DNA of 64,000 nt from Octopus sinensis. Its lineage: Eukaryota. The notes under the pieces are model-generated. The model saw nothing but the letters and a program-made list of their open reading frames with translations. It was not told the DNA's origin and made no database searches. Every line of letters starts with the position of its first letter. Within the stretch, counting starts at the first letter, position 1. A program made the position numbers and the translations under genes. Below are positions 15,240-64,000 of this stretch, piece after piece. The stretch is taken from NCBI RefSeq assembly GCF_006345805.1, contig NC_042997.1, forward strand, positions 212,040,001-212,104,000. Direction: 5' to 3'.

Positions 15240-17148
15240 TAGAGTGAAGCAACAGGCCTGGAAAGGATTGGCAGGTAGCTAGGGTTATTAGGGCTAGAAG
15301 ACAGATATACTTAGCCAGGGGAGAAGCAGAAGGTGGGGAAGTTTGCCACTGTTCTGCAGCATGAGGACCAGGGGCCTTTACGTGTTTTAGATTACAAGAC
15401 AGTGTGTGAGAGAGAATTGTGATGTGGTAGGAGAGAAGTGTGTCTGCATGGATGACGGGTCACTTGCAGTTAGTGATTCTGCAAAGAAGGAGGCATGGAA
15501 GTGGCACTATGAAAGGCTGCTAAATGTAGAGAATGCATGGGAAAAAGAGAGCCTGCCCAATGTGGGGCCAATGGAGGGGTTGGCTATTCGAATTGACAGT
15601 AGCTGAGTAGATAAAGCAATTAAGGATATGAAGACAGGGAAAGCCTCCAGCCCACTAGAAGTCATTGCTGAGATGCTTAAAATATCTGGTATAATGGGAT
15701 ATGGACCTTATCACCCATACAGTTAATCAGGTTGTCCATGGAAGGAGTCATACCCAACGATTGGTGTGGCAGCATCAAAGTCAACTGTTACAAAGGAAAA
15801 GTGATGTCTCAGACAGGAATAGTTAGAGCAACACCAAATTGCTGAACCAGGTAATGAAAGTTGGAGAAAGGGTCACAGCTCAATTAATCAGGAAGAGTTA
15901 GCATAAATGAGACGCAGTTTGGATTTGTGTCTCTTGGAGAGGCAACTACAGAAGTACTTGACCAAAAAGTAAACCTCTATTTCTAACTTTTGTTGACATG
16001 GAGAAAGCCTTTGATAGGGTTTCCCTTTCCCTTATCTCATGGGCAATGTAGAAGATAGGAATAAATGGATGGCCAGTGAGAGCTGTACAAGCCATGTACA
16101 TGGATGCTGTCAATAAGGTGAAGGTCATCAATGAGCATAGCAAGGAATTTAGTGTACAAGTAGGAGTCCACCAAGGATCAGTTCTCAGCCCCCTCTTGTT
16201 TATCATGATCCTCCAAGTTATAACGGAAGAATTTAAGGCTGGCTGTTCTTGGGAGCTCCTCTATGCCAATGACCTTGTTCTTACTGCTGAATCACCACCA
16301 GAACTAGAGAAGAAATTTCAGGTATGGAAGCATGGATAGAAATCAAAGGGAGTTAGAGTTAATTTAGCAAAGACCAAAACCCTAATAAATAAGAGAGCTG
16401 ACAAATCACTGATCCCTTCAGGCTGATGCCTCTGCTTGATGTGTAGAAAAGGTGTCGGGAGAAACTCCATACGGTGTACTAAGTGCAAGCTATGGGCACA
16501 TAACAGGTGCAGTGGTATCACTGGAATATTAACAGAGAATTTAGTTCTTACATGTGGCAGATGTGTAGCTACATTAAACACCTGGAATACACAAAAAACA
16601 GCCTCCCTCAAATGTCAGAGTGTATCCTCGGAAGTGGTAGAGAGTTTCTGTTACTTAGGTGACCAAGTTAGCAGAGGTGGAGGTTGTTCTGAAAGCATAG
16701 CTGCTAGAATGAGAACAGGCTGGGCAGAGGTTAGAGAGCTACTACCTCTGTTGGTAACAAAAGGCCTCTCTCTTGGAGTGAAAGGCAGATTGTATGATGC
16801 CATTGTATGAACAGCTATGCTACGTGGCAATGAGACATGTGAAGTTTGAAAGAAAGGAAGCCAGTGTGGTTAGCTGGATGGGTAATGTCAATGTGTATAT
16901 ATGGCAGATTTGAGAGAAGAACTCGGTATATGAGACATCAAATGTAGAGTGCAAGAGAGGAGACTGCACTGGTATGGTCATGTGATGCGTATAAATGAAG
17001 ACAGCTGCATCAAGAGGTGCTGATCTCTAATTGTGGAGGGAAGGAGTAGACCCAGGAAGACATAGGATGAAGTAGTGAGAAAGGATCTTCAGATGTAGGG
17101 TCTCACAGAGGGGATGACAGGGGACCAAGACTCCTGGTGGTTTGTTGT
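15240..17148 (+). mobile_element. RTE-clade LINE, degenerate reverse transcriptase with PHD-like finger
   Basis: Fragments VGVHQGSVLSPLLF, ELLYANDLVL, FVDMEKAFDRV, CRKGVGRNSIRCTKCKLWAHNRCSG and FCYLGD; many stops and frameshifts. Confidence 0.92.
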
Positions 17149-17258
17149 GCTTGTGTGTGTGTGTGTGTGTGTGTAAATCTTTGTTGTCATAAGAAATGAG
17201 AAGCTTCAAGAGAATGTGAAGTAATTAATTTTAACTGGTTGAACTTGAAGCAGTAAAG

Positions 17259-17657
17259 CTCTCTCTTTTACTCTTTTACTTGTTTCAGTCATTTGACTGC
17301 GGCCATGCAGGAGCACCGCCTTTAATCGAGCAACTCGCCCCCGGACTTATTCTTTTTGTAAGCCTAGTACTTATTCTATCGGTCTCTTTTGCCGAACCGC
17401 TAAGTAACGGGGACATAAACACACCAGCATCGGTTGTCAAGCGATGCTAGAGGGACAAACACACACACGCATATATATATATACATATATACAACGGGCT
17501 TCTTTCAGTTTCCGTCTACCAAATCCACTCACAAGGCTTCAGTCGTCGGCCCGAGGCTATAGTAGAAAAGACTTGCCCAAGGTGCCACGCAGTGGGACTG
17601 AACCCGGAACCATGTGGTTGGTAAACAAGCTACTTACCACACAGCCACTCCTGTGCC
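17259..17657 (-). mobile_element. SINE family A
   Basis: Full-length copy. Confidence 0.9.
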
Positions 17658-17840
17658 TGTATATAAGCTATAAATAATAGGATGTAAATAAGGTATTAAA
17701 AAATGCTTTGGATAAAAAAAAGTTTAAGGCTGCCCCTTTATACATCATTTGTAAGCGTCTTAATATGTAAGCAAGTCTGTCACTGTCTCTGCAGGTTCTC
17801 CTGTTAAGAAGTGATTAGCAATTGCTAATAATAATAATAA

Positions 17841-18503
17841 CAGGGAAATACCTAAGGGTATTTGAAGGGGACGGGGACTTGCCCCATGATAAAAACTGGT
17901 GGGAACACAAACCACCTCCAGTGCTTGAAAATGTTCACATCTCACTCCCCTGGAACTTCACCATTCAAACTGACAGAAAGATAGATGCAAATAGGCCAGA
18001 CATCATACTGAAAAACTTCAGACAAAGAACATGCCTCCTCATTGATATGACTGTCCCAATCGATATAAACGTATCTGTGAAGACCTACCAAAAACTGAGC
18101 AAATATAAAGATCTTGAAATAGAAATCAGCAAAATGTGGAACCTGAAGACTAAAACAATACCTGTTGTCATAGGTGCCCTGGGAATGATAGTAAAAGGGG
18201 CTGATTGCTACCTAGCTCAGATACCAGGAAACCCCAAAATGGCAGAAACTCAAAAGATAGTGCTCATGGGAACTGCTCATATCCTACACAAAATACTTTC
18301 TATGTAATCTCTAGTTTTAAAACAAACACATAATTTTCTTTTGGTTTCTTAAACATTCTCTAGAACAACACTAAGTACAAAACCAAATATATGGCACCCT
18401 AGGCATAACACCAACATGAACTTCTAACTTGTTGTCTCTTGAGGTCTCTGGGTGAGACTTGGAGCCAACTTGTACAAATGCAAAGCAAAAGTCAAACATA
18501 AAA
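17841..18503 (+). mobile_element. Dong/R4-clade non-LTR retrotransposon 3' end (restriction-like endonuclease)
   Basis: ORF ...DRKIDANRPDIIL...LLIDMTVP...KLSKYKDLEIEI...IPVVIGALG... is a PD-(D/E)xK RLE domain. Flanked by (TAA)n on both sides. Confidence 0.88.
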
Positions 18504-30099: not shown

Positions 30100-30314
30100 G
30101 TGTGTGTGTGTGTGTGTGTGTGTTGTAATAATGCTTGATTTTCAAGGAGAAATCCAGAGGAAAAGTTACCAGAGCAGCCAAAGGTCGCGTAAGCGCTTAA
30201 AGATATTAGCAGCCACGTGTACATAGGTAATAATTCCAAGAAGAAGTGAGATGTGTTTTGGAGAATGTAAGAGAAATGGAAAATAACATATGTTGTGTTT
30301 GTCTCCATTTCTCT

Positions 30315-30356
<42 letters not shown>

Positions 30357-30417
30357 TATATAACATTATTGGTGAATTGAAGAAATGGAGCTGAACGCAG
30401 ATTGAACAGAAATCGTT

Positions 30418-30510
30418 TTATTTCATTCTACACGTGTTTCGAAAGCACAAATTACCAAAATCCGATTGAATAATGGGACCATATTGTGTCTTTCTCTTCA
30501 GGAGAAAAAA
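30418..30510 (-). ncRNA. Minimal type-I hammerhead ribozyme motif (mirror copy)
   Basis: Minus strand reads CTGAAGA-gaaagacacaa...ttgtgctttc-GAAAC-ACGT-GTA. Stem I is weaker than in the right arm. Confidence 0.65.
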
Positions 30511-30769
30511 GGAAATCCGTTGGAAAACAAAAACAGAACAGAGGCGGAGCAAAAACAAATCGAACTATGCTCCTAAGAGCCCATGGCGAAACTGTTTATC
30601 AGTGTATGTTGAGACCGGTGGATGAAGAATTCAGCCTGACCCGTTGAATTCTTCAGCCACCGGTTCTCAACATACACTGATAAACAGTTTCGCCATGGGC
30701 TCTTAGGAGCATAGTTCGATTTGTTTTTGCTCCGCCTCTGTTCTTTTTTTGTTTTTCCAACGGATTTCC

Positions 30770-30865
30770 TTTTTTCTTCCTGAAGAGAAAGACACAATAT
30801 GGTCCCATTATTCAATCGGATTTTGGTAATTTGTGCCTTTCGAAACACGTGTAGAATGAATAAAA
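30770..30865 (+). ncRNA. Minimal type-I hammerhead ribozyme motif
   Basis: CTGAAGA (30780-86); stem II gaaagacacaa/ttgtgcctttc (10/11 pairs); GAAAC-ACGT-GTA with a palindromic helix III; bulged stem I. Predicted cut after 30853. Confidence 0.75.
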
Positions 30866-31067
30866 CGATTTCTGTTCAATCTGCGTTCAGCTCCATTTCT
30901 TCAATTCACCAATAATGTTTTAATTTCAATTATCCGCACCAACGCACGGTTGCAACACCATATGGTTGTACCTCCAACCGTGCTGTTTACTGCTGTGATT
31001 TTTGCTACTAAGGTATCGGTAAACTTTGGATTAATCTACTACAAGATTATTCATCTTTCTATTTCAC

Positions 31068-31070
31068 ATA

Positions 31071-31133
<63 letters not shown>

Positions 31134-31194
31134 GTATATATATGTATATATATATATATATGTATATGTATATATATGTATATATATATATATA

Positions 31195-31225
<31 letters not shown>

Positions 31226-31458
31226 ATGTATAGTATATATATATGTATATATATATATCTATATATATATATATCTATATATATATATGTATATGTATAT
31301 ATAATTATATAATATATGTATATGTATTATATATGTATATGTATATATATATGTATAGTATATATATATGTATATATATATATGTATATATATGTATATG
31401 TATATATATATGTATATATATATTAATATGTATATATATATATATGTATATATATATG

Positions 31459-31489
<31 letters not shown>

Positions 31490-31729
31490 GTATATATATG
31501 TATATGTATATATTATATATATGTATATATATATGTATATGTATAATATTATATATGTATATATATGTATATGTATATATATGTATATGTATATATATAT
31601 ATATGTATATGTATATATATGTATATATATGTATATGTATATATATGTATATGTATATATATGTATATGTTATATGATATGTATATGTATATGTATATAT
31701 ATGTTATATATGTATATATATGTATATGT

Positions 31730-31771
<42 letters not shown>

Positions 31772-32049
31772 ATATGTATATATAGTATATGTATATGTAT
31801 GTATGTATATGTTATGTATATGTATGTATATGTAAGTATATGTATATATATGTATATATATGATATGTATATATATGTTATGTATATATAGTATATGTAT
31901 GTATATGTATATAATGTATATGTATATATATGTATATAATATGTATATGTATATATATGTATATGTATATATATGTATATGTATATATATGTATATGTAT
32001 ATGTATATATATGTATATATATGTATATATATGTATATGTATATGTATA

Positions 32050-32084
<35 letters not shown>

Positions 32085-32343
32085 ATATGTATATATATGT
32101 ATATGTATATGTATATGTATGTATATGTATATGTATATGTATGTATATGTATGTATATGTATATATATGTATATATATGTATATGTATATATATGTATAT
32201 GTATATATATGTATATGTATGTATATGTATATATATGTATATGTATATATATGTATATGTATATGTATGTATATGTATATATATGTATATATATGTATAT
32301 GTATATATATGTATATGTATATATATGTATATGTATATATATG

Positions 32344-32374
<31 letters not shown>

Positions 32375-32385
32375 GTATATATATG

Positions 32386-32416
<31 letters not shown>

Positions 32417-32434
32417 GTATATATATGTATATGT

Positions 32435-32480
<46 letters not shown>
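31068..32480. repeat. 1.4-kb (TA)/(TATATG) microsatellite
   Basis: Direct inspection. Confidence 0.98.
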
Positions 32481-32483
32481 TAC

Positions 32484-33476
32484 GTGAGAAGACCAGGCAG
32501 GACAAGTGAGCCCAGCCCACTTATGAATGCCTTTCCTCCCTTGGACACAAAGACCGGTTGAGGCAAGCGAAGTCGATATAGAACCTCATCCGACGACAGA
32601 CAACCCATCCCAACCCCATGCTTGCGAAGACATGTTGGGGCAAGCGAAATCGAAACCGAATTGAACCAGCCAGGATCCCTGGCCTGGTGGTACGTAAAAA
32701 GCACTATCCGACTCGGGGCCTGGCACGTAAAATACTCCAATGCGACCAGTACGACAGGCACCCATGCCAACCCCCTTTGCTTGTGAAGACATGTTGGGGC
32801 AAGCGAAATCGAAATCGAATTGAACCAGCCAGGATCCCTGGTCTGGTGGTACGTAAAAAGCACTATCCGACTCATGGCCGTGGCACGTAAAATACTCCAA
32901 TGCGACCGTACGACAGGCACCCTTGCCACCCCCTTTGCTTGTGAAGACATGTTGGGGCAAGCGAAATCGAAATCGAATTGAACCAGCCAGGATCCCTGGT
33001 CTGGTGGTACGTAAAAAGCACTATCCGACTCATGGCCGTGGCACGTAAAATACTCCAATGCGACCGTACGACAGGCACCCTTGCCAACCCCCTTGCTTGT
33101 GAAGACATGTTGGGGCAAGCGAAATCGAAATCGAATTGAACCAGCCAGGATCCCTGGTCTGGTGGTACGTAAAAGCAAGCACTATCCGACTCGTGCCGAT
33201 GCCGCACACCACCTCGACTGGCTTCCGTGCCGGTGGCACATAAAATACACCAATCTGACCGTGGCCGTTGCCAGCCCCGCCTGGCACCTGTGCAGGTGGC
33301 ACGTAAAAAGCACCCACTACACTCACGGAGTGGTTGGCGTTAGGAAGGCATCCAGCTGTAGAAACATTGCCAAATTAGACTGGAGCCTGGTGCAGCCTTC
33401 TGGCTTCCCAGAACCCCGGTCGACCGTCCAACCCATGCTAGCATGGAGAACGGACGTTAAACGACGATGATGATGA
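32484..33476 (+). mobile_element. RTE LINE 3' end with a 158-bp tandem array
   Basis: Starts at the ORF end (LREKTRQDK*); about 3.6 units of 158-159 bp starting at 32621, 32780, 32938 and 33096; ends in (GAT)n. Confidence 0.85.
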
Positions 33477-57313: not shown

Positions 57314-57695
57314 ACTCTCTCTCTTTTACTCTTTTACTTGTTTCAGTCATTTGACTGCGGCCATGCTGGAGCACCACCTTTTAGTACTTATTCTATCGGT
57401 CTCTTTTGACGAACCGCTAAGTGACGGGGACGTAAACACACCAGCATCGGTTGTCAAGCAATGCTAGGGGGACAAACACAGACACACAAACATATACACA
57501 CACACTTATATATATATATATATACATATATACGACAGGCTTCTTTCAGTTTCCGTCTACCAAATCCACTCACAAGGCATTAGTCGGCCCAGGGCTATAG
57601 CAGAAGACACTTGCCCAAGATGCCACGCAGTGGGACTGAACCCGGAACCATGTGGTTGGCTAGCAAGCTACTTACCACACAGTCACTCCTGCACC
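57314..57695 (-). mobile_element. SINE family A with an internal deletion of about 40 bp
   Basis: caccaccttttagtac junction, shared only with the 63488 copy. Confidence 0.9.
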
Positions 57696-57714
57696 TTATA
57701 TATATTATATAATA

Positions 57715-57972
57715 GTGTACATTTAAACACAAAAGAAAACTACCCTTTAACAGGTAATTTTTATATGCTAGAAAGAGCAGCCAACATGTCCAAAACCACG
57801 ATTTAATAGCAATTTTCGAAGTAAATGAAAAATAAAAAAATAACAAGGTAAAAGTTTTTTATTTACTTCGAAAATTGCTATTAAATCGTGGTTTTGGCCG
57901 TGTTGGCTGCTCTTTCTAGCATGTAAAAATTACCTGTTAAAGGGTAGTTTTCTTTTGTGTTTAAATGTACAC
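57715..57972. mobile_element. Palindromic MITE with TA target duplication
   Basis: TA|GTGTACATTTAAACAC...GTGTTTAAATGTACAC|TA; arms about 115 bp. Second copy starts at 63862. Confidence 0.85.
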
Positions 57973-58391
57973 TATTTTAAAATATGAATATGTTGTCTGT
58001 TGACCATTTATACATGCTAGGTTACTGGTGGTGATATTTTATAACGAATATTCACTACCCTATATATGTATGTATATATATACGGTTAAGTAATTGAGAT
58101 TCAAGTGAATTCTAATGAATTCACATGAATATGGTCCTTAACTAGGATGCACCGGAAATCTATATGGTGTTAACCATACGACAAGTGGGGTGATTACAAA
58201 TAGGAAAAAAGCAACAAGAATGGATTAAAATCTCGGTACAATCGTTTCGTACGAGGACATCTTTAATAAGCTACAAAAAATGCAGTGAATACAGATGGCT
58301 CGTACTCGTCAGCCGAAAAAACATCAGAGAATTCCCAAACATCAAAAGGGGTAGATACAAAAGAGGGTGTAAGATTAACTGCATTGAAGAA

Positions 58392-58732
58392 AGTTCGATT
58401 CATGGAGATCCGATGAAAGGTTTTAAACTTACAGAATTTGTGCATGTCTACATATAGCTCATATTGAATTGCTAATCAAGTTGTGTGAAGAAATTTTCGG
58501 ATACAGTCATGCAAAATTTCTGAAAATCCGAGTAAGAAGCAAAGTGACTGTCATATCGTGTAGAGGAACAGATTGTTATTGAAATTTACAAGAATCGCAG
58601 ATAAGTTCGATTCTTGGAGATCCGATGAAAAGTCTTGAACTTACAGAATATGTGCATGTCCTTATAGTTCATAATCCAGTTTTGTGAGGAGATTTAGGGT
58701 ACAATCATGCGGAAATATCAGGGAATCCGATT
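58392..58732. repeat. Diverged direct repeat of about 130 bp
   Basis: aagttcgattc(a/t)tggagatccgatgaaa...gaaaatccg/ggaatccg at about 58392 and 58604; abuts the helicase fragment. Confidence 0.7.
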
Positions 58733-58739
58733 CCCTGAT

Positions 58740-59028
58740 ATTTTAGCATTTCATCATTAATATGGTGAACAGTTTTATTCCTCGGGGCCAGTATAGCCTT
58801 TTCGCCAATCCAATCCATATTCTGATAATTAGCTTGTAGATCTGGGAACACTGCATCTCTGAGATCAGAAGGTGTCTTAACAATGTTACAAATGGAATCG
58901 ATGGCAATATTACCATTTTCATCCCCTGGTATTTTGCCTTCGCCAAGTGCAAGGAGGGTGTGAGGAAATGCTGCTGATGTGATATTACGTCGCATATGAG
59001 CACGCATATTGGTGTGAAGTTTGAGAGT
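58740..59028 (-). mobile_element. Helitron/Helentron PIF1-like helicase fragment
   Basis: TLKLHTNMRAH...LLALGEGK...VFPDL...WIGEKAILAPRNKTVHHINDEML matches the LxxNMR, LLxIGEG and RAILAPxNxxVxxIN motifs of Helitron helicases. Confidence 0.85.
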
Positions 59029-59039
59029 TACTTCCCTTT

Positions 59040-60209: not shown

Positions 60210-60479
60210 CTGTTCAGGCTTGGATATAAACATGTAGTGTAAAACATTCAGACATCATCATTATCTTCCCATATCCTGTGGTACATTCTTTCGCCATAGC
60301 CACAAGAATGATGAAAATAGCTCTTCCTTCCCATTTGAAGGAAGGAGGCGTGACAATATTGACGATAGACTCGGCTGATAAACCGACTCGTCCCACACAC
60401 GACAGCAGTCGTTCGACATAGATAGAAAGATAGATATAGATAGAAAGATAGATCGATGTAGATAGAAAGATAGATAGAT

Positions 60480-60783
60480 AGTGGGTGGCACAAAGTGTAA
60501 AGGACGTAAATAGCGCTATAAGCAAGGGAGATAACTAGAAACATATTTGCGTTTCTAATAAGTCGAGGAAGTAAACTGTAATACGGAGATGTACTTGCAT
60601 AGCAAGTAATTTGATCTGAGATCGTGTGCTGAAACGAAAACAATTGCAGCGTGGAAGGTGTTTGTAAGCCATTTAAGAAACACACAAAAGCCGTTCGATT
60701 CACTTCAACATTTAAGTTTAATTTGTCAAAATATTTTCGTCGCTAAAATCCGCGACCTGTTCACTGACAAAGTCCGTGCTGCA
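60480..60783 (-). mobile_element. Penelope-like terminal-repeat fragment
   Basis: Repeat-like non-coding segment that contains a hammerhead-like fold at 60722-60771. Family assignment is inferred from that motif. Confidence 0.45.
60722..60771 (-). ncRNA. Hammerhead-like variant with G3-C8 swap
   Basis: TTTGTCA-GTGAACA-G-GTCGC-ggatttta-GCGAC-GAAA-ATAT-TT-TGACAAA: 7-bp stem I, 5-bp stem II, palindromic helix III. Confidence 0.45.
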
Positions 60784-60827
60784 TCTCTGTAAATATTTCC
60801 CGCAAAATCTTACGTATTTGAATCACT

Positions 60828-61410
60828 ATAGCAGAAGGTACTTCTGTTAACGGTGTTGCATCAAGCACGCATAAGCGGCGAGGTTACCTTGGATGGGATG
60901 AATACTTCATGTCAGTGGCTTTCCTCTCTGCTCAACGTAGCAAAGACCCAAGAACTCAGGTAGGAGCTTGTATTGTTAATGAAAATCAACGTATTGTTGG
61001 CACCGGATATAACGGTATGCCTCGAGGTTGTAGTGACGATGGAAAAACATCGTCACTACAACCTCGAGGCATACCGTTGGTGCCATAACAGTCCCACTGA
61101 GCTAGATAACAAATATCTCTACGTATGTCATGCTGAGCTTAATGCTGTTCTCAATAAGAACTCTGCAGACGTTCGCAATTGCACTATGTATGTCGGTTTG
61201 TTTACTTGCAATGAATGTGCTAAAGTCATTACACAGTCTGGAATTAAAGAAGTCATATACTTTTCGGATAAATATAAGGACCGAACTACCTCTCAAGCTT
61301 CTCGAAAAATGTTTAAACATGCTGAAATAAAATATCGCCAGTATCAACCTACAGACGAACAAATTGTTATAGATTTTACTTCAATAGAAGAAAAGAAAGA
61401 CCGATTATAA
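60828..61410 (+). pseudogene. DCTD: Intronless dCMP deaminase copy with ATA in place of the likely start codon and an internal frameshift
   Basis: The first frame reads (I)AEG...[56 protein letters not shown], then stops at 61086-61088. A second frame continues [66 protein letters not shown] to TAA at 61410. HAE and CxxC zinc motifs are present; no introns. Confidence 0.92.
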
Positions 61411-61655
61411 GTCCAGTTTCGCACCTTCCTTCTAAAGTTTCAACTTTAATCAGATGCGAACATAAACACTTGGAATTCATTATATTGCCACCACTGCCTT
61501 TTCATAATGATATCCTGTTATATTTTCTAGCTAAAATATTAACTGTTGTATTTTTAACGAACATTTTTATTCCATTTTGTTTTCGTTTGTGTGTACATAA
61601 CATTTTAACTTCCTCTTTCTAAGAAAGTGAAACTATCCACATTTGCTCCAATACG

Positions 61656-61849
61656 CAGTAGCGTAGCTGGGGGGTGTGTGTGCATTTTGGGCCGCACTTT
61701 TAAAGAGGCTAATGTGTGTGTGTCTGTATTTATTGTATGTGTGTATAAGTAGTTATATGCTTATATTATCTATTATAGTAATATTTTTCTGTTGAAATCC
61801 GTTTTAAGGCGGTCAATAGTTTAATTAAAGATGTGTCTATAAATGTGTG

Positions 61850-61880
<31 letters not shown>

Positions 61881-62360
61881 ATATATATATATTACATATT
61901 ATATTTTATATTTCTATTTCCTTGTCTATTATATTTACTATATATGTTGTATAATGCCTTTACTAATATGTAATGGTGTAATAAAGTATTGATTGAGTAT
62001 CATCTGATGGTTGATGTTTTATTGATTTAAGTATGTTTCTCCATTTTCTAATTTTGTTACATATATATATATACATGTGTATACATATATATATATACAC
62101 AAGTGTATACATTACACATGAAATGTATTTATTTATAAACTTTAAACTGAACTTCAATTGTTTTATAAACCTAACAGCTTGGTGTACGTAAATAAACGGC
62201 GTAAATTAACGAAGGTATAAACCTGACGGAAATACACGAAGTTGACTACTTTCACTTCTAACAACCAAAGGCATGACTGCCGTTTTTTTTTTTTGTGAGG
62301 GTCCGGGGACAGCAACTAGAAAGGCCTCCCCGGGCAGCACAGATTCTAGCTACGCTAGTG
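61656..62360. mobile_element. hAT-type non-autonomous element
   Basis: Ends CAGTAGCGTAGCTGG and CTAGCTACGCTAGTG (13/15 inverted); 8-bp flanks ccaatacg/ccaatatt. Confidence 0.65.
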
Positions 62361-62618
62361 CCAATATTCCCTCTAACTCCATCTAATAAAAAGTTATCCG
62401 ACTTCCACCCAGCATGTTGCGTCTTCTCACTAGCTTTTCTACTACATAGCCACTATCCACTGGAGCTGGTTGATCTCATACCTATTCTACTCAGGATCAC
62501 CCGACTCCTCTACCCTCTCGTCTCTTATTCATTTGCATAAAACACTACACCTCATCTTTCTCAGACGTTAACTCTTGGAATATCTTTTCTGGAGTTGTTC
62601 AAGAACATCAGTTACATC

Positions 62619-63353
62619 GGTTCTACTAGCGAACTGTGGTCCGGGTGCGCGCAGTCGCGCATCCGCGCTAGCTAGTCGTAAGTAGTCGATCCTACAACGA
62701 CTTTTTAACCCTAACCCTAACTTGTTTATAAAAATAATTTATTTACTTAGTTTAAAAAATCATTTACTTTGCGTTTTATTTACTTAGTTCGAAAAATATT
62801 ATTTAATATTATTTAATGGCGCGGGAGTGGCTGTGTGGTAAGTAGCTTGCTAACTAACCACATGGTTCCGGGTTCAGTCCCACCGCGTGGCATCTTGGGC
62901 AAGTGTCTTCTGCTATAGCCCCGGGCCGACCAATGCCTTGTGAGTGGATTTGGTAGACGGAAACTGAAAGAAGCCTGTCGTATATATGTATATATATATA
63001 TATGAGTGTGTGTGTGTCTGTGTTTGTCCCCCTAGCATCGCTTGACAACCGATGCTGATGTGTTTAAGTCCCCGTCACTTAACGGTTCGGCAAAAAGAGA
63101 CCGATAGAATAAGTACTGGGCTTACAAAGAATAAGTCCCGGGGTTGATTTGCTCGACTAAAGGCGGTGCTCCAGCATGGCCGCAGTCAAATGACTGAAAC
63201 AAGTAAAAGAGTAGAAGAGAGTAAAGAGTAAAGAGTAATTTTCTTTGATCTGTATTCAGCCTTGAAATACAAACATACGCGGAAGTCGTTGTAGGATCGA
63301 CTACTTACGACTAGCTAGCGCGAGTGCGTGCACCACTGTTCGCTAGTAGTACC
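62619..63353. mobile_element. MULE-type MITE carrying a SINE
   Basis: TIRs of about 80 bp starting with GG; perfect 9-bp TSD agttacatc at 62610-18 and 63354-62. Confidence 0.85.
62818..63237 (+). mobile_element. tRNA-headed SINE family A (sense copy)
   Basis: A-box tggctgtgtggtaag, B-box ggttcagtcc, central (TA)/(TG) tract, tail (AAAAGAGT)n. Confidence 0.9.
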
Positions 63354-63487
63354 AGTTACATCAACTTAAACAGTTTCGGAGTCGCCTACGAAAGGTCACC
63401 AGTGCAGACCCTCACAGGTCAAACCAAACCATAAAAAAAAAAAATTAGTCTTATTAGGTTAATTATGTCTTTTTTTTTTATTTTTGA

Positions 63488-64000
63488 TACTTGTTTCAGT
63501 CATTTGACTGCGGCCATGCTGGAGCACCACCTTTTAGTACTTATTCTATCGGTCTGTTTTGACGAACCGCTAAGTGACGGGGACATAAACACACCAGCAT
63601 CGGTTGTCAAGCAATGCTAGGGGGACAAACACAGACACACAAACATATACACACACACTTATATACATATACATATATACGACAGGCTTCTTTCAGTTTC
63701 CGTCTACCAAATCCACTCACAAGGCATTAGTCGGCCCGGGGCTATAGCAGAAGACACTTGCCCAAGATGCCACGCAGTGGGACTGAACCCGGAACCATGT
63801 GGTTGGCTAGCAAGCTACTTACCACACAGTCACTCCTGTACCTTATATATATTATATAATAGTGTACATTTAAACACAAAAGAAAACTACCCTTTAACAG
63901 GTAATTTTTATATGCTAGAAAGAGCAGCCAACATGTCCAAAACCACGATTTAATAGCAATTTTCGAAGTAAATGAAAAAAAAAAAAATAACATGGTAAAA
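63488..64000. repeat. Segmental duplicate of 57335-57853 (SINE plus MITE)
   Basis: Same deletion, same diagnostic substitutions and same flanking MITE; offset 6153 bp. Confidence 0.9.

What the first reader, a model, noticed from the sequence alone, without database searches (positions are those of the whole stretch)
30362..30919. Foldback element with two outward-facing, self-masking hammerhead ribozymes
Seen: a near-perfect 558-bp palindrome in which each arm has an intact hammerhead core (CTGAAGA, stem II, GAAAC-ACGT-GTA). Established: minimal type-I hammerheads with a palindromic helix III occur in Penelope-like element pLTRs and cleave as dimers; PLE insertions can carry inverted pLTRs. 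Inference: on either strand a read-through transcript makes the antisense arm first, so the ribozyme is sequestered in about 270 bp of dsRNA. A transcript starting in the centre would leave it free. If this lies in a CdsA intron, it would be an orientation-independent ADAR/Dicer substrate and a conditional self-cleaver. It may represent a non-autonomous double-hammerhead foldback family.
Basis: partly seen in the sequence, partly recalled or inferred. Interest (0 to 1): 0.8.

Follow-up and report, generated by a model that had tools for sequence, protein, structure and literature searches.

The report
Inverted pair of hammerhead retroelement copies
A 558-bp near-perfect hairpin in an octopus genome is two head-to-head copies of a short retroelement that carries a hammerhead ribozyme, inserted into a TA microsatellite; this layout is already described for Penelope-like elements, so it is a tidy example of a known kind rather than a new one.

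Summary
Positions 30362-30919 form a palindrome with arms of about 272 nt, 2 substitutions, 5 one-base homopolymer indels and an 11-nt centre. Each arm carries an outward-facing type-I hammerhead with an intact core, and the predicted cut after 30853 is correct. The motif is not chance: a descriptor of equal stringency gives fewer than 0.001 hits per shuffled window. An unrelated third hammerhead at 58231-58318 (-) has the same unusual build, with a 55-57-nt helix II hairpin, a 2-bp helix III closed by a 4-nt loop, and A17. Five helix pairs differ on both sides between the two. Rfam detects none of them.

The window is from Octopus sinensis or a very close relative. The element sits between (TA)24 and a 1.4-kb (TA)n array, has no poly(A), and has its 5' ends at the centre and 3' ends outward. 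This matches published Penelope-like element (PLE) insertions: 5'-truncated, often with an adjacent inverted copy, biased to AT-rich or (TA)n sites, with the hammerhead near the 3' end.

The most likely reading is a young PLE-type, non-autonomous or truncated insertion made as an inverted pair at integration. The ribozymes are passengers, buried in a hairpin of about -476 kcal/mol. I found no evidence for a foldback family or a CdsA intron. Copy number could not be tested.

The parts
30315..30362 (.). (TA)24 microsatellite directly abutting the left arm; probable target sequence
   Evidence: Tandem Repeats Finder, period 2, 24 copies; sequence
30362..30633 (-). Left arm: element copy whose sense strand (the one carrying the hammerhead) is the minus strand, with its 3' end pointing outward to the left
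   Evidence: 97.1% identical to the reverse complement of the right arm
30416..30511 (-). Left-arm type-I hammerhead: core intact (CTGAAGA 30501-30495, GAAA 30440-30437, A17 = 30429). Helix I is degraded by two indels, and helix II has a bulged A
   Evidence: Descriptor scan; constrained fold -11.5 kcal/mol against an MFE of -18.1
30634..30644 (.). 11-nt non-palindromic centre (GCCTGACCCGT), the junction of the two 5' ends
   Evidence: Alignment; predicted hairpin loop
30645..30919 (+). Right arm: element copy in sense orientation on the plus strand, with its 3' end pointing outward to the right
30770..30865 (+). Right-arm type-I hammerhead: helix I 30770-30779 with 30854-30865, CTGAAGA 30780-30786, helix II hairpin 30787-30841, GAAA 30842-30845, helix III ACACGTGT 30845-30852, A17 = 30853
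   Evidence: Descriptor scans; shuffles; helix II present in the MFE and centroid folds; homodimer forms an 8-bp intermolecular helix III
30920..31070 (+). 151 bp of unique sequence between the right arm and the next (TA)n array. It is either a one-sided 3' extension of the right copy or original target DNA; this is unresolved
   Evidence: No other copy in the window or the fetched loci; no significant similarity to the sequence downstream of HHR2 (P = 0.1)
31071..32480 (.). 1.41-kb (TA)n-type microsatellite on the right side
   Evidence: Tandem Repeats Finder, score 1588
58231..58318 (-). HHR2: an independent, solo hammerhead of the same build (CTGACGA 58312-58306, 7-bp helix II closing a 57-nt hairpin, GAAA 58248-58245, helix III C-GATT-G, A17 = 58237, 6-bp helix I). 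It serves as a comparator showing that this hammerhead class recurs in this genome
   Evidence: constrained fold -24.0 kcal/mol against an MFE of -26.3, and the homodimer MFE adopts the full double-hammerhead fold; pair counts

Best explanation
This is a young insertion of a hammerhead-bearing retroelement of the Penelope-like (PLE) type. The copy is either a 5'-truncated PLE 3' end or a short non-autonomous element mobilised by PLE proteins (retrozyme-like). It landed in a (TA)n microsatellite and was laid down as two head-to-head copies in a single integration event.

Shown: each arm reads, from the centre outward, about 125 nt of non-coding sequence, then a type-I hammerhead, then 66 nt to the end. 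So the two 5' ends meet at the centre and the two 3' ends face the flanks. There is no poly(A).

Inferred: reverse transcription was primed on the cut target. The cDNA either snapped back on itself and copied itself, or two cDNAs primed from the two cut strands met. Snap-back is favoured, because the two arms stop within 11 nt of each other.

The hammerheads are inherited from the parent element, where tandem sense copies can pair through the palindromic helix III. At this locus they are passengers. A read-through RNA from either strand folds into a duplex of about 270 bp that buries the single sense ribozyme, so self-cleavage here is unlikely. The main consequence of any transcription would be a long double-stranded RNA.
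For: 1. The hammerhead is real and of the metazoan PLE/retrozyme type.
- The core is intact, G10.1-C11.1 is present, and helix III is 2 bp closed by a palindromic 4-nt loop.
- Chance expectation is below 0.001 per window.
- The unrelated HHR2 shares the build. On the structural alignment 90.5% of cells pair and 5 of 15 pairs change on both sides, against 33-60% paired and 0-1 double changes when the partners are slid.

2. The layout matches published PLE insertions.
- They show a high degree of 5' truncation, often with an adjacent inverted 5'-truncated copy that forms inverted repeats, a tail at one end only, and an insertion bias to microsatellites including (TA)n (PMC8557442).
- Paired minimal hammerheads 100-700 bp apart on opposite strands were seen in Schistosoma mansoni (PMC4209133).

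3. The flanks fit. (TA)24 abuts the left arm and a 1.41-kb (TA)n array lies 151 bp to the right.

4. The biochemistry fits. A purified PLE protein cuts and extends both DNA strands and prefers AT-rich sites (5'-ATT-3'). It starts reverse transcription 85-92 nt downstream of the hammerhead cut site, so genomic copies end shortly after the ribozyme (PMC11167929). Here the arms end 66 nt after the cut site.

5. The host fits. The window is Octopus sinensis or a close relative, 98% identical to CM016859.1. Octopus vulgaris has 30 Penelope families with 329 recent insertions (PMC13282606).

6. The insertion is young. There are 2 substitutions in about 272 nt.

7. Animal hammerhead repeats (retrozymes) are reported to derive from PLE terminal repeats (bioRxiv 10.64898/2026.07.22.740005).
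Against: - No reverse transcriptase or GIY-YIG coding remnant lies in or near the element, or anywhere in the window. The link to PLEs therefore rests on the ribozyme type, the layout and the target.
- No homologous copy was found, so neither 5' truncation nor family membership could be shown directly.
- The hammerhead departs from the published PLE minimal consensus. It has no unpaired base between positions 9 and 10.1, and helix II is a 55-nt hairpin rather than 7-8 bp (one search compared).
- The near-equal arm lengths are not expected from two independent truncations, so a snap-back step has to be added.
- A second foldback without a hammerhead lies at 57692-57995, also beside a TA run. 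This shows that this genome makes palindromes by some route that needs no hammerhead element.
- (TA)n is very common in this window, so the flank argument is weak on its own.
Confidence: 0.6

Rival explanations
1. A non-autonomous foldback or MITE-type DNA transposon family that carries a hammerhead in each arm and moves as a whole palindrome.
For: Near-perfect long inverted arms with a tiny loop are the hallmark of foldback elements. A TA dinucleotide can be read on both sides if the ends are shifted by one base (30359-30360 and 30921-30922), as for Tc1/mariner-type MITEs. Tc1-Mariner elements and MITEs are annotated in Octopus vulgaris.
Against: There is no second copy in the window or in about 70 kb of other octopod DNA. 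The putative TA duplication is uninformative inside a (TA)n run. Metazoan hammerheads are documented in PLEs, retrozymes and satellites, not in DNA transposons. The outward 3'-end orientation and the short distance from ribozyme to end are predicted by the retroelement model, but would be arbitrary for a MITE.
Confidence: 0.15
2. A solo hammerhead element was inserted first. It was later duplicated in inverted orientation by a DNA-level event, such as fold-back repair of a break or replication template switching at the fragile (TA)n tract.
For: (TA)n tracts are self-complementary and are known from general knowledge to be prone to breaks. The symmetric arms and the 11-nt centre are typical of fold-back priming. 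A second foldback without a hammerhead at 57692-57995 also abuts a TA run, so a route independent of any element exists in this genome.
Against: The symmetry stops exactly 66 nt after each ribozyme and does not extend into non-repetitive flanking DNA on the right, as a break-induced fold-back often would. The inverted pair with 3' ends outward is already a described product of PLE integration. With these data the two models cannot be told apart.
Confidence: 0.15
3. An assembly or read artefact, such as a chimeric fold-back read from long-read sequencing.
For: All five indels between the arms are homopolymer-length differences. That is the error profile of noisy long reads, so this region may be poorly polished. 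The PLE literature warns that such structures trouble assemblies.
Against: The symmetry is bounded. Both flanks are unique and are not reverse complements of each other, whereas a missed-adapter or fold-back chimera mirrors everything beyond the junction. The arms also differ by two substitutions.
Confidence: 0.05
4. The hammerhead-like motif is a chance match inside an ordinary inverted repeat.
For: No Rfam hammerhead family matches, even at E <= 10. Helix I is weak.
Against: Expectation is below 0.001 per window at equal stringency, with 0 hits in 1500 shuffles once the palindromic helix III is required. An unrelated second locus has the same build with compensatory pairs.
Confidence: 0.02

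Closest known systems
Minimal and type-I hammerheads in the pseudo-LTRs of Penelope-like elements (Cervera & de la Pena 2014, PMC4209133)
   Same: Type-I topology with a CUGANGA...GAAA...UH core, a G10.1-C11.1 pair, a short AU-rich helix I and a longer-than-usual helix II. Helix III is reduced to 2 bp with a palindromic loop, so activity needs a dimer. The motifs occur mostly as dispersed single copies, and sometimes as pairs 100-700 bp apart on opposite strands.
   Different: Helix II here is a 55-57-nt three-segment hairpin rather than 7-8 bp. The unpaired base between positions 9 and 10.1 is absent. No PLE reading frame is attached. Rfam models do not detect it.
PLE insertion architecture: 5'-truncated copy with an adjacent inverted 5'-truncated copy, inserted into microsatellites (Craig et al. 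2021, PMC8557442; Frangieh et al. 2024, PMC11167929)
   Same: Head-to-head copies with 3' ends outward, a (TA)n or AT-rich target, no poly(A), the hammerhead a few tens of nucleotides from the 3' end, and possibly extra sequence at one end only.
   Different: Published cases usually flank a full or partial reading frame and have arms of unequal length. Here both arms are only about 272 nt and stop within 11 nt of each other. The one-sided extra sequence would be 151 nt, not 30-40 nt.
Animal non-LTR retrozymes (Cervera & de la Pena 2020, PMC7229834; bioRxiv 10.64898/2026.07.22.740005)
   Same: A short (170-400 nt class), AT-rich, non-coding unit with one type-I hammerhead that has a short palindromic helix III. 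Retrozymes are proposed to be non-autonomous derivatives of PLE pseudo-LTRs, and monomeric dead copies are common.
   Different: Retrozymes are head-to-tail tandem repeats that give circular RNAs. Here the two units are head-to-head, so one RNA never carries two sense ribozymes. No overlap beyond one unit length was detected within the arm (P = 0.17).
Foldback elements and palindromic MITEs
   Same: Almost the whole element is an inverted repeat with a tiny loop, it is small and non-coding, and it sits in an AT-rich site.
   Different: No multi-copy evidence, no clear target-site duplication, and ribozyme cargo that is otherwise tied to retroelements.

Membership tests
Hammerhead ribozyme, type I | Conserved core C3-U4-G5-A6-N7-G8-A9, G12-A13-A14, A15.1-U16.1 and H17 | tested here: met
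   CTGAAGA...GAAA...T-A in both arms and CTGACGA...GAAA...T-A in HHR2
Hammerhead ribozyme, type I | Three helices around the core, with helix I open and a G10.1-C11.1 closing pair | tested here: met
   Helix II is 5 bp (arms) or 7 bp (HHR2) with a G-C closing pair. Helix I is 6 of 6 in HHR2, 5 of 6 in the right arm and 4 of 6 in the left arm. Overall 90.5% of cells are paired, against 33-60% in slid controls
Hammerhead ribozyme, type I | Match to a curated Rfam hammerhead covariance model | tested here: not met
   No hammerhead family at the gathering threshold or at E <= 10 on either locus. My reading is that the cause is the insertion of about 45 nt in loop II together with the minimal helix III
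Hammerhead ribozyme, type I | Compensatory base changes across independent examples | tested here: met
   5 of 15 pairs change on both sides between the palindrome's hammerhead and HHR2; 5 of 500 shuffles reach this. Only two independent sequences are available, so the evidence is thin
Hammerhead ribozyme, type I | Site-specific self-cleavage | not testable with these tools
   Energetics only. The monomer hammerhead fold lies 2.3-6.6 kcal/mol above the MFE, and homodimers form the 8-bp helix III
Penelope-like element (PLE) insertion | Reading frame with a telomerase-like reverse transcriptase and a GIY-YIG endonuclease | tested here: not met
   No GIY-YIG or PLE reverse-transcriptase motifs in the six-frame translation. 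Pfam hits in the window are a LINE-type RVT_1, a PHD finger and a dCMP deaminase only. At most this is a truncated or non-autonomous copy
Penelope-like element (PLE) insertion | Hammerhead in the terminal repeat, a short distance upstream of the 3' end | tested here: met
   The arm ends 66 nt after the cut site. The reference PLE starts reverse transcription 85-92 nt after its cut site
Penelope-like element (PLE) insertion | 5' truncation with tandem and/or adjacent inverted copies | tested here: inconclusive
   The inverted head-to-head pair is present. Truncation cannot be shown without a longer relative
Penelope-like element (PLE) insertion | AT-rich or microsatellite target, without poly(A) | tested here: met
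   (TA)24 on the left, TTAATTT... on the right, then 1.41 kb of (TA)n; no A-tail
Penelope-like element (PLE) insertion | Sequence homology of the arm to the terminal region of an autonomous PLE in the same genome | not testable with these tools
   No octopus genome could be searched by DNA. Probes found nothing
PLE minimal-hammerhead consensus (Cervera & de la Pena 2014) | [quoted passage not shown] | tested here: not met
   G10.1 follows A9 directly. Helix II is a 55-57-nt composite hairpin. This is closer to the variants with a small palindromic helix III described for flies, rotifers and shrimps
Non-LTR retrozyme | Head-to-tail tandem repeats of one hammerhead-bearing unit | tested here: not met
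   The two units are inverted, not direct, and there is no direct repeat of the arm in the window
Foldback or MITE DNA transposon | Multiple copies with constant termini and a fixed target-site duplication | tested here: inconclusive
   Single copy in 64 kb plus about 70 kb. A possible TA duplication cannot be judged inside (TA)n

The most novel reading that the evidence does not exclude
Octopus genomes may hold an unannotated class of hammerheads with a helix II hairpin of about 55 nt, invisible to Rfam and to standard descriptors. These would be carried by short PLE-dependent elements that regularly integrate as snap-back foldbacks. Each insertion would then create a perfect double-stranded RNA of about 270 bp when transcribed, a recurrent source of ADAR and small-RNA substrates in a lineage known for extreme RNA editing. 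Ribozyme activity would be possible only from transcripts that start inside the element.
Probability: 0.12. Interest if true: 0.55.

Novelty: new member of a known kind. Interest (0 to 1): 0.3.

Why it matters
The locus is a clean, young example of how Penelope-type elements lay down inverted copies. The arms end within 11 nt of each other, which argues for a snap-back step and could inform the still unresolved integration mechanism. It also shows that octopus carries hammerheads with a very long helix II that current Rfam models and common descriptors miss, so ribozyme counts in cephalopods are probably underestimates. Beyond that it is an ordinary piece of repeat DNA. Nothing here indicates a host function, and the RNA-editing and Dicer ideas apply to any transcribed inverted repeat.

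Tried and rejected
- Rfam at the gathering threshold on the whole window, and at E <= 10 on both hammerhead loci, gave only generic microRNA-hairpin hits on the palindrome and no hammerhead.
- I used the 91-aa spurious ORF inside the palindrome as a probe for other copies in 5.8 billion proteins. No candidate was found.
- Exact-pattern scans for the two core boxes found nothing in JGI metagenomes or IMG/VR.
- I tried to sample octopus DNA through proteins. The dCMP-deaminase loci of O. sinensis, O. bimaculoides and Argonauta hians (about 70 kb non-redundant) held no hammerhead and no arm homologue. The transposon-ORF search returned octopus proteins only from UniRef, without contigs, and the look-up failed.
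- A relaxed descriptor (U3-A8 cores, hairpin helix III, one core mismatch) found no further copies.
- Tests for homology between the palindrome element and HHR2 outside the ribozyme, and for the 151-bp right-hand segment belonging to the element, were not significant (P = 0.1 and 0.93). A shared AACACCATAT 10-mer looks like chance.
- A test for more than one unit length within an arm, which would suggest a circular or tandem template, was not significant (P = 0.17).
- Searches for a CdsA gene, a CBF-domain gene syntenic with O. bimaculoides, and PLE coding remnants were all negative.
- The supplementary PLE consensus sequences of PMC8557442 are not held.

Full report
**1. Observation**

Reading 30100-31200 and aligning 30362-30919 to its own reverse complement confirms a near-perfect palindrome, with 542 identities in 563 columns. 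The arms are 30362-30633 and 30645-30919, around an 11-nt non-palindromic centre (GCCTGACCCGT). blastn gives 97.1% identity between the arms over 279 nt (E = 5e-129).

The arms differ by two substitutions and five one-base indels. All five indels are homopolymer-length changes. Three of them fall inside the hammerhead region and weaken helix I and helix II of the left copy.

The symmetry is bounded. The left flank is (TA)24 (30315-30362). The right flank is 151 bp of unique sequence followed by a 1.41-kb (TA)n-type array at 31071-32480.

**2. The hammerheads**

The right arm, on the plus strand, reads as follows.

| Part | Sequence | Coordinates |
|---|---|---|
| Helix I, 5' strand | TTTTTTCTTC | 30770-30779 |
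| Core | CTGAAGA | 30780-30786 |
| Helix II | GAAAG...CTTTC closing a 55-nt composite hairpin | 30787-30841 |
| Core | GAAA | 30842-30845 |
| Helix III | ACACGTGT (2 bp plus the palindromic loop ACGT) | 30845-30852 |
| A17 | A | 30853 |
| Helix I, 3' strand | GAATGAATAAAA | 30854-30865 |

The left arm carries the mirror copy on the minus strand, with A17 at 30429.

A structure descriptor run on both strands of the window returned three hits: the two arms and an unexpected third motif at 58231-58318 (-). This third motif, HHR2, reads TTTCGG / CTGACGA / GTACGAG-(43 nt)-CTCGTAC / GAAA / C-GATT-G / T-A / CCGAGA. It has a 7-bp helix II, a 6-bp helix I, a 57-nt helix II hairpin and the same 2-bp helix III with a 4-nt loop.

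Dinucleotide-preserving shuffles give these expectations:
- 0.26 hits per window for the loosest descriptor;
- 0.0007 with helix II of at least 5 bp and G10.1-C11.1;
- none in 1500 shuffles once a palindromic helix III of at least 6 nt is required.

Relaxing the core to U3-A8 variants, hairpin helix III or one core mismatch adds nothing in the window or in four octopod loci.

The palindrome's element and HHR2 share no significant sequence outside the ribozyme. On a structural alignment, however, 90.5% of cells pair and 5 of 15 pairs differ on both sides. When the partners are slid, 33-60% pair and 0-1 pairs show double changes.

The motif is therefore a genuine hammerhead class that recurs in this genome. 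Rfam does not see it at the gathering threshold or at E <= 10. I attribute this to the very long helix II and the minimal helix III.

**3. Folding**

| RNA | Energy (kcal/mol) |
|---|---|
| Full 558-nt transcript, plus strand | -475.8, a single hairpin |
| Full 558-nt transcript, minus strand | -472.8, a single hairpin |
| One arm alone | -50.6; keeps helix II but not helix I |
| Right arm, hammerhead fold vs MFE | -13.1 vs -16.8 |
| Left arm, hammerhead fold vs MFE | -11.5 vs -18.1 |
| HHR2, hammerhead fold vs MFE | -24.0 vs -26.3 |
| Right-arm homodimer vs two monomers | -45.3 vs -33.6 |

Homodimers form the 8-bp intermolecular helix III, and for HHR2 the dimer MFE is the complete double hammerhead.

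The 'self-masking' inference is therefore thermodynamically sound. But a read-through RNA contains one sense and one antisense copy, so the dimer the motif needs cannot form within one molecule.

**4. Organism and context**

The window's right end, from 60225, is 98% identical to units of an intronless dCMP-deaminase-like tandem array on Octopus sinensis chromosome CM016859.1. The window is O. sinensis or a very close relative. It is repeat-rich, with SINEs, a LINE carrying RVT_1 and PHD domains, CR1-like fragments and a PIF1-like fragment.

I found none of the following:
- a CdsA (CTP_transf_1) signature;
- a Pfam domain in any 45-95-aa ORF between 18 and 44 kb;
- the CBF-domain gene that neighbours the array in O. 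bimaculoides;
- a PLE reverse-transcriptase or GIY-YIG remnant.

Whether the palindrome lies in an intron cannot be decided.

**5. What it is**

From the centre outward, each arm has about 125 nt of non-coding sequence, then the hammerhead, then 66 nt. The two 5' ends meet at the centre and the two 3' ends face the flanks. There is no poly(A).

This matches the literature on Penelope-like elements (PLEs) point for point:
- PLE insertions are strongly 5'-truncated and often carry an inverted 5'-truncated copy immediately adjacent.
- They can have extra sequence at one end only.
- They prefer microsatellites, including (TA)n (PMC8557442).
- Hammerheads with a short palindromic helix III sit in their terminal repeats, mostly as dispersed single copies and sometimes as opposite-strand pairs 100-700 bp apart (PMC4209133).
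- A purified PLE protein cuts and extends both target strands and prefers AT-rich DNA. It starts reverse transcription 85-92 nt downstream of the hammerhead cut site (PMC11167929).
- Animal hammerhead repeats (retrozymes) are now argued to be non-autonomous derivatives of PLE terminal repeats.
- Octopus vulgaris has 30 Penelope families with recent insertions.

I therefore read the locus as one young PLE-type integration that produced an inverted pair.

Because the arms stop within 11 nt of each other, I favour a snap-back of the first cDNA on itself over two independent truncations. An alternative is two run-off copies of a short RNA of about 280 nt with a fixed 5' end. These mechanistic steps are inference.

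**6. Rivals**

- A DNA foldback or MITE family (0.15) cannot be excluded without a genome search. Nothing requires it, and hammerheads are not known cargo of DNA transposons.
- Palindrome formation after insertion at the fragile (TA)n tract (0.15) is supported by a second foldback without a hammerhead at 57692-57995, beside a TA run.
- An assembly artefact (0.05) is unlikely, because the symmetry is bounded by unique, non-mirrored flanks and the arms differ by substitutions. The homopolymer indels do suggest imperfect polishing.
- Chance (0.02) is excluded by the shuffles and by HHR2.

**7. Limits**

No copy of the arm was found anywhere else:
- the window;
- about 70 kb of other octopod DNA;
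- a protein-space probe with the internal ORF;
- exact-pattern scans of metagenomes and viral contigs.

No tool here searches cephalopod genomes by DNA. Copy number, 5' extension into a PLE reading frame, target duplication and the status of the 151-bp right-hand segment therefore remain open.

**8. Verdict**

The 'new foldback family', 'CdsA intron' and 'conditional self-cleaver' additions are not.

The locus is a new member of a known kind. Its modestly unusual features are a 55-57-nt helix II, invisibility to Rfam and near-equal arms. Interest is about 0.3.

Noticed in passing
window 58231-58318 (-): An independent, solo type-I hammerhead (HHR2). It has a 7-bp helix II closing a 57-nt hairpin, a 6-bp helix I, helix III C-GATT-G and A17 at 58237. 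It is a better-formed ribozyme than those in the palindrome, and is unrelated in sequence outside the core. A TA-rich run begins about 145 nt downstream.
   Followed up: yes
window 57692-57995, and 63797-64000: A second foldback (141-nt arms, 93% complementary, 22-nt loop) without any hammerhead, directly beside a TA-rich run and a SINE. Its left arm and loop recur at 98.5% identity at the window's end, so it belongs to a duplicated SINE-containing segment.
   Followed up: partly
window 60225-64000; loci L001, L002, L003: The window ends in a unit of a tandem array of intronless dCMP-deaminase-like genes. ORF 60964-61407 (+) matches PF00383 and is 76% identical in protein to the Octopus sinensis copies, while flanking DNA is up to 98% identical. 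The array is present in both O. sinensis and O. bimaculoides.
   Followed up: partly
window 31071-32480: A very long (1.41 kb) imperfect (TA)n-type microsatellite. Further TA-rich arrays lie at 23.8-25.5 kb and 33.5-35.4 kb, next to CR1-like 3' fragments.
   Followed up: no
window 16052-18304 (+): A LINE remnant with a reverse-transcriptase fragment (RVT_1), a PHD finger and a conserved C-terminal ORF. The ORF is 85% identical to an O. bimaculoides protein and has 57-65% relatives on long ENA contigs of unidentified origin, plus matches in cnidarian (Exaiptasia, Oculina) and shrimp proteins.
   Followed up: partly
window 58391-58448 and 58603-58660: A 58-nt direct repeat (91% identity, 212-nt spacing) just upstream of HHR2 on its sense strand. 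It contains no second hammerhead, so it is not a pseudo-LTR-like duplication of the ribozyme.
   Followed up: no
window 58708-59037 (-): A fragment of a PIF1/Helitron-like helicase, only 40% identical in protein to the PIF1 gene that neighbours the dCMP-deaminase array in O. bimaculoides.
   Followed up: partly
window 32480-33470: Several overlapping ORFs share repeated peptide blocks (for example RIVLFTYHQTRDPGWFNSISISLAPTCLHKQ). This points to a tandemly repeated, SINE-like satellite directly after the long (TA)n array.
   Followed up: no
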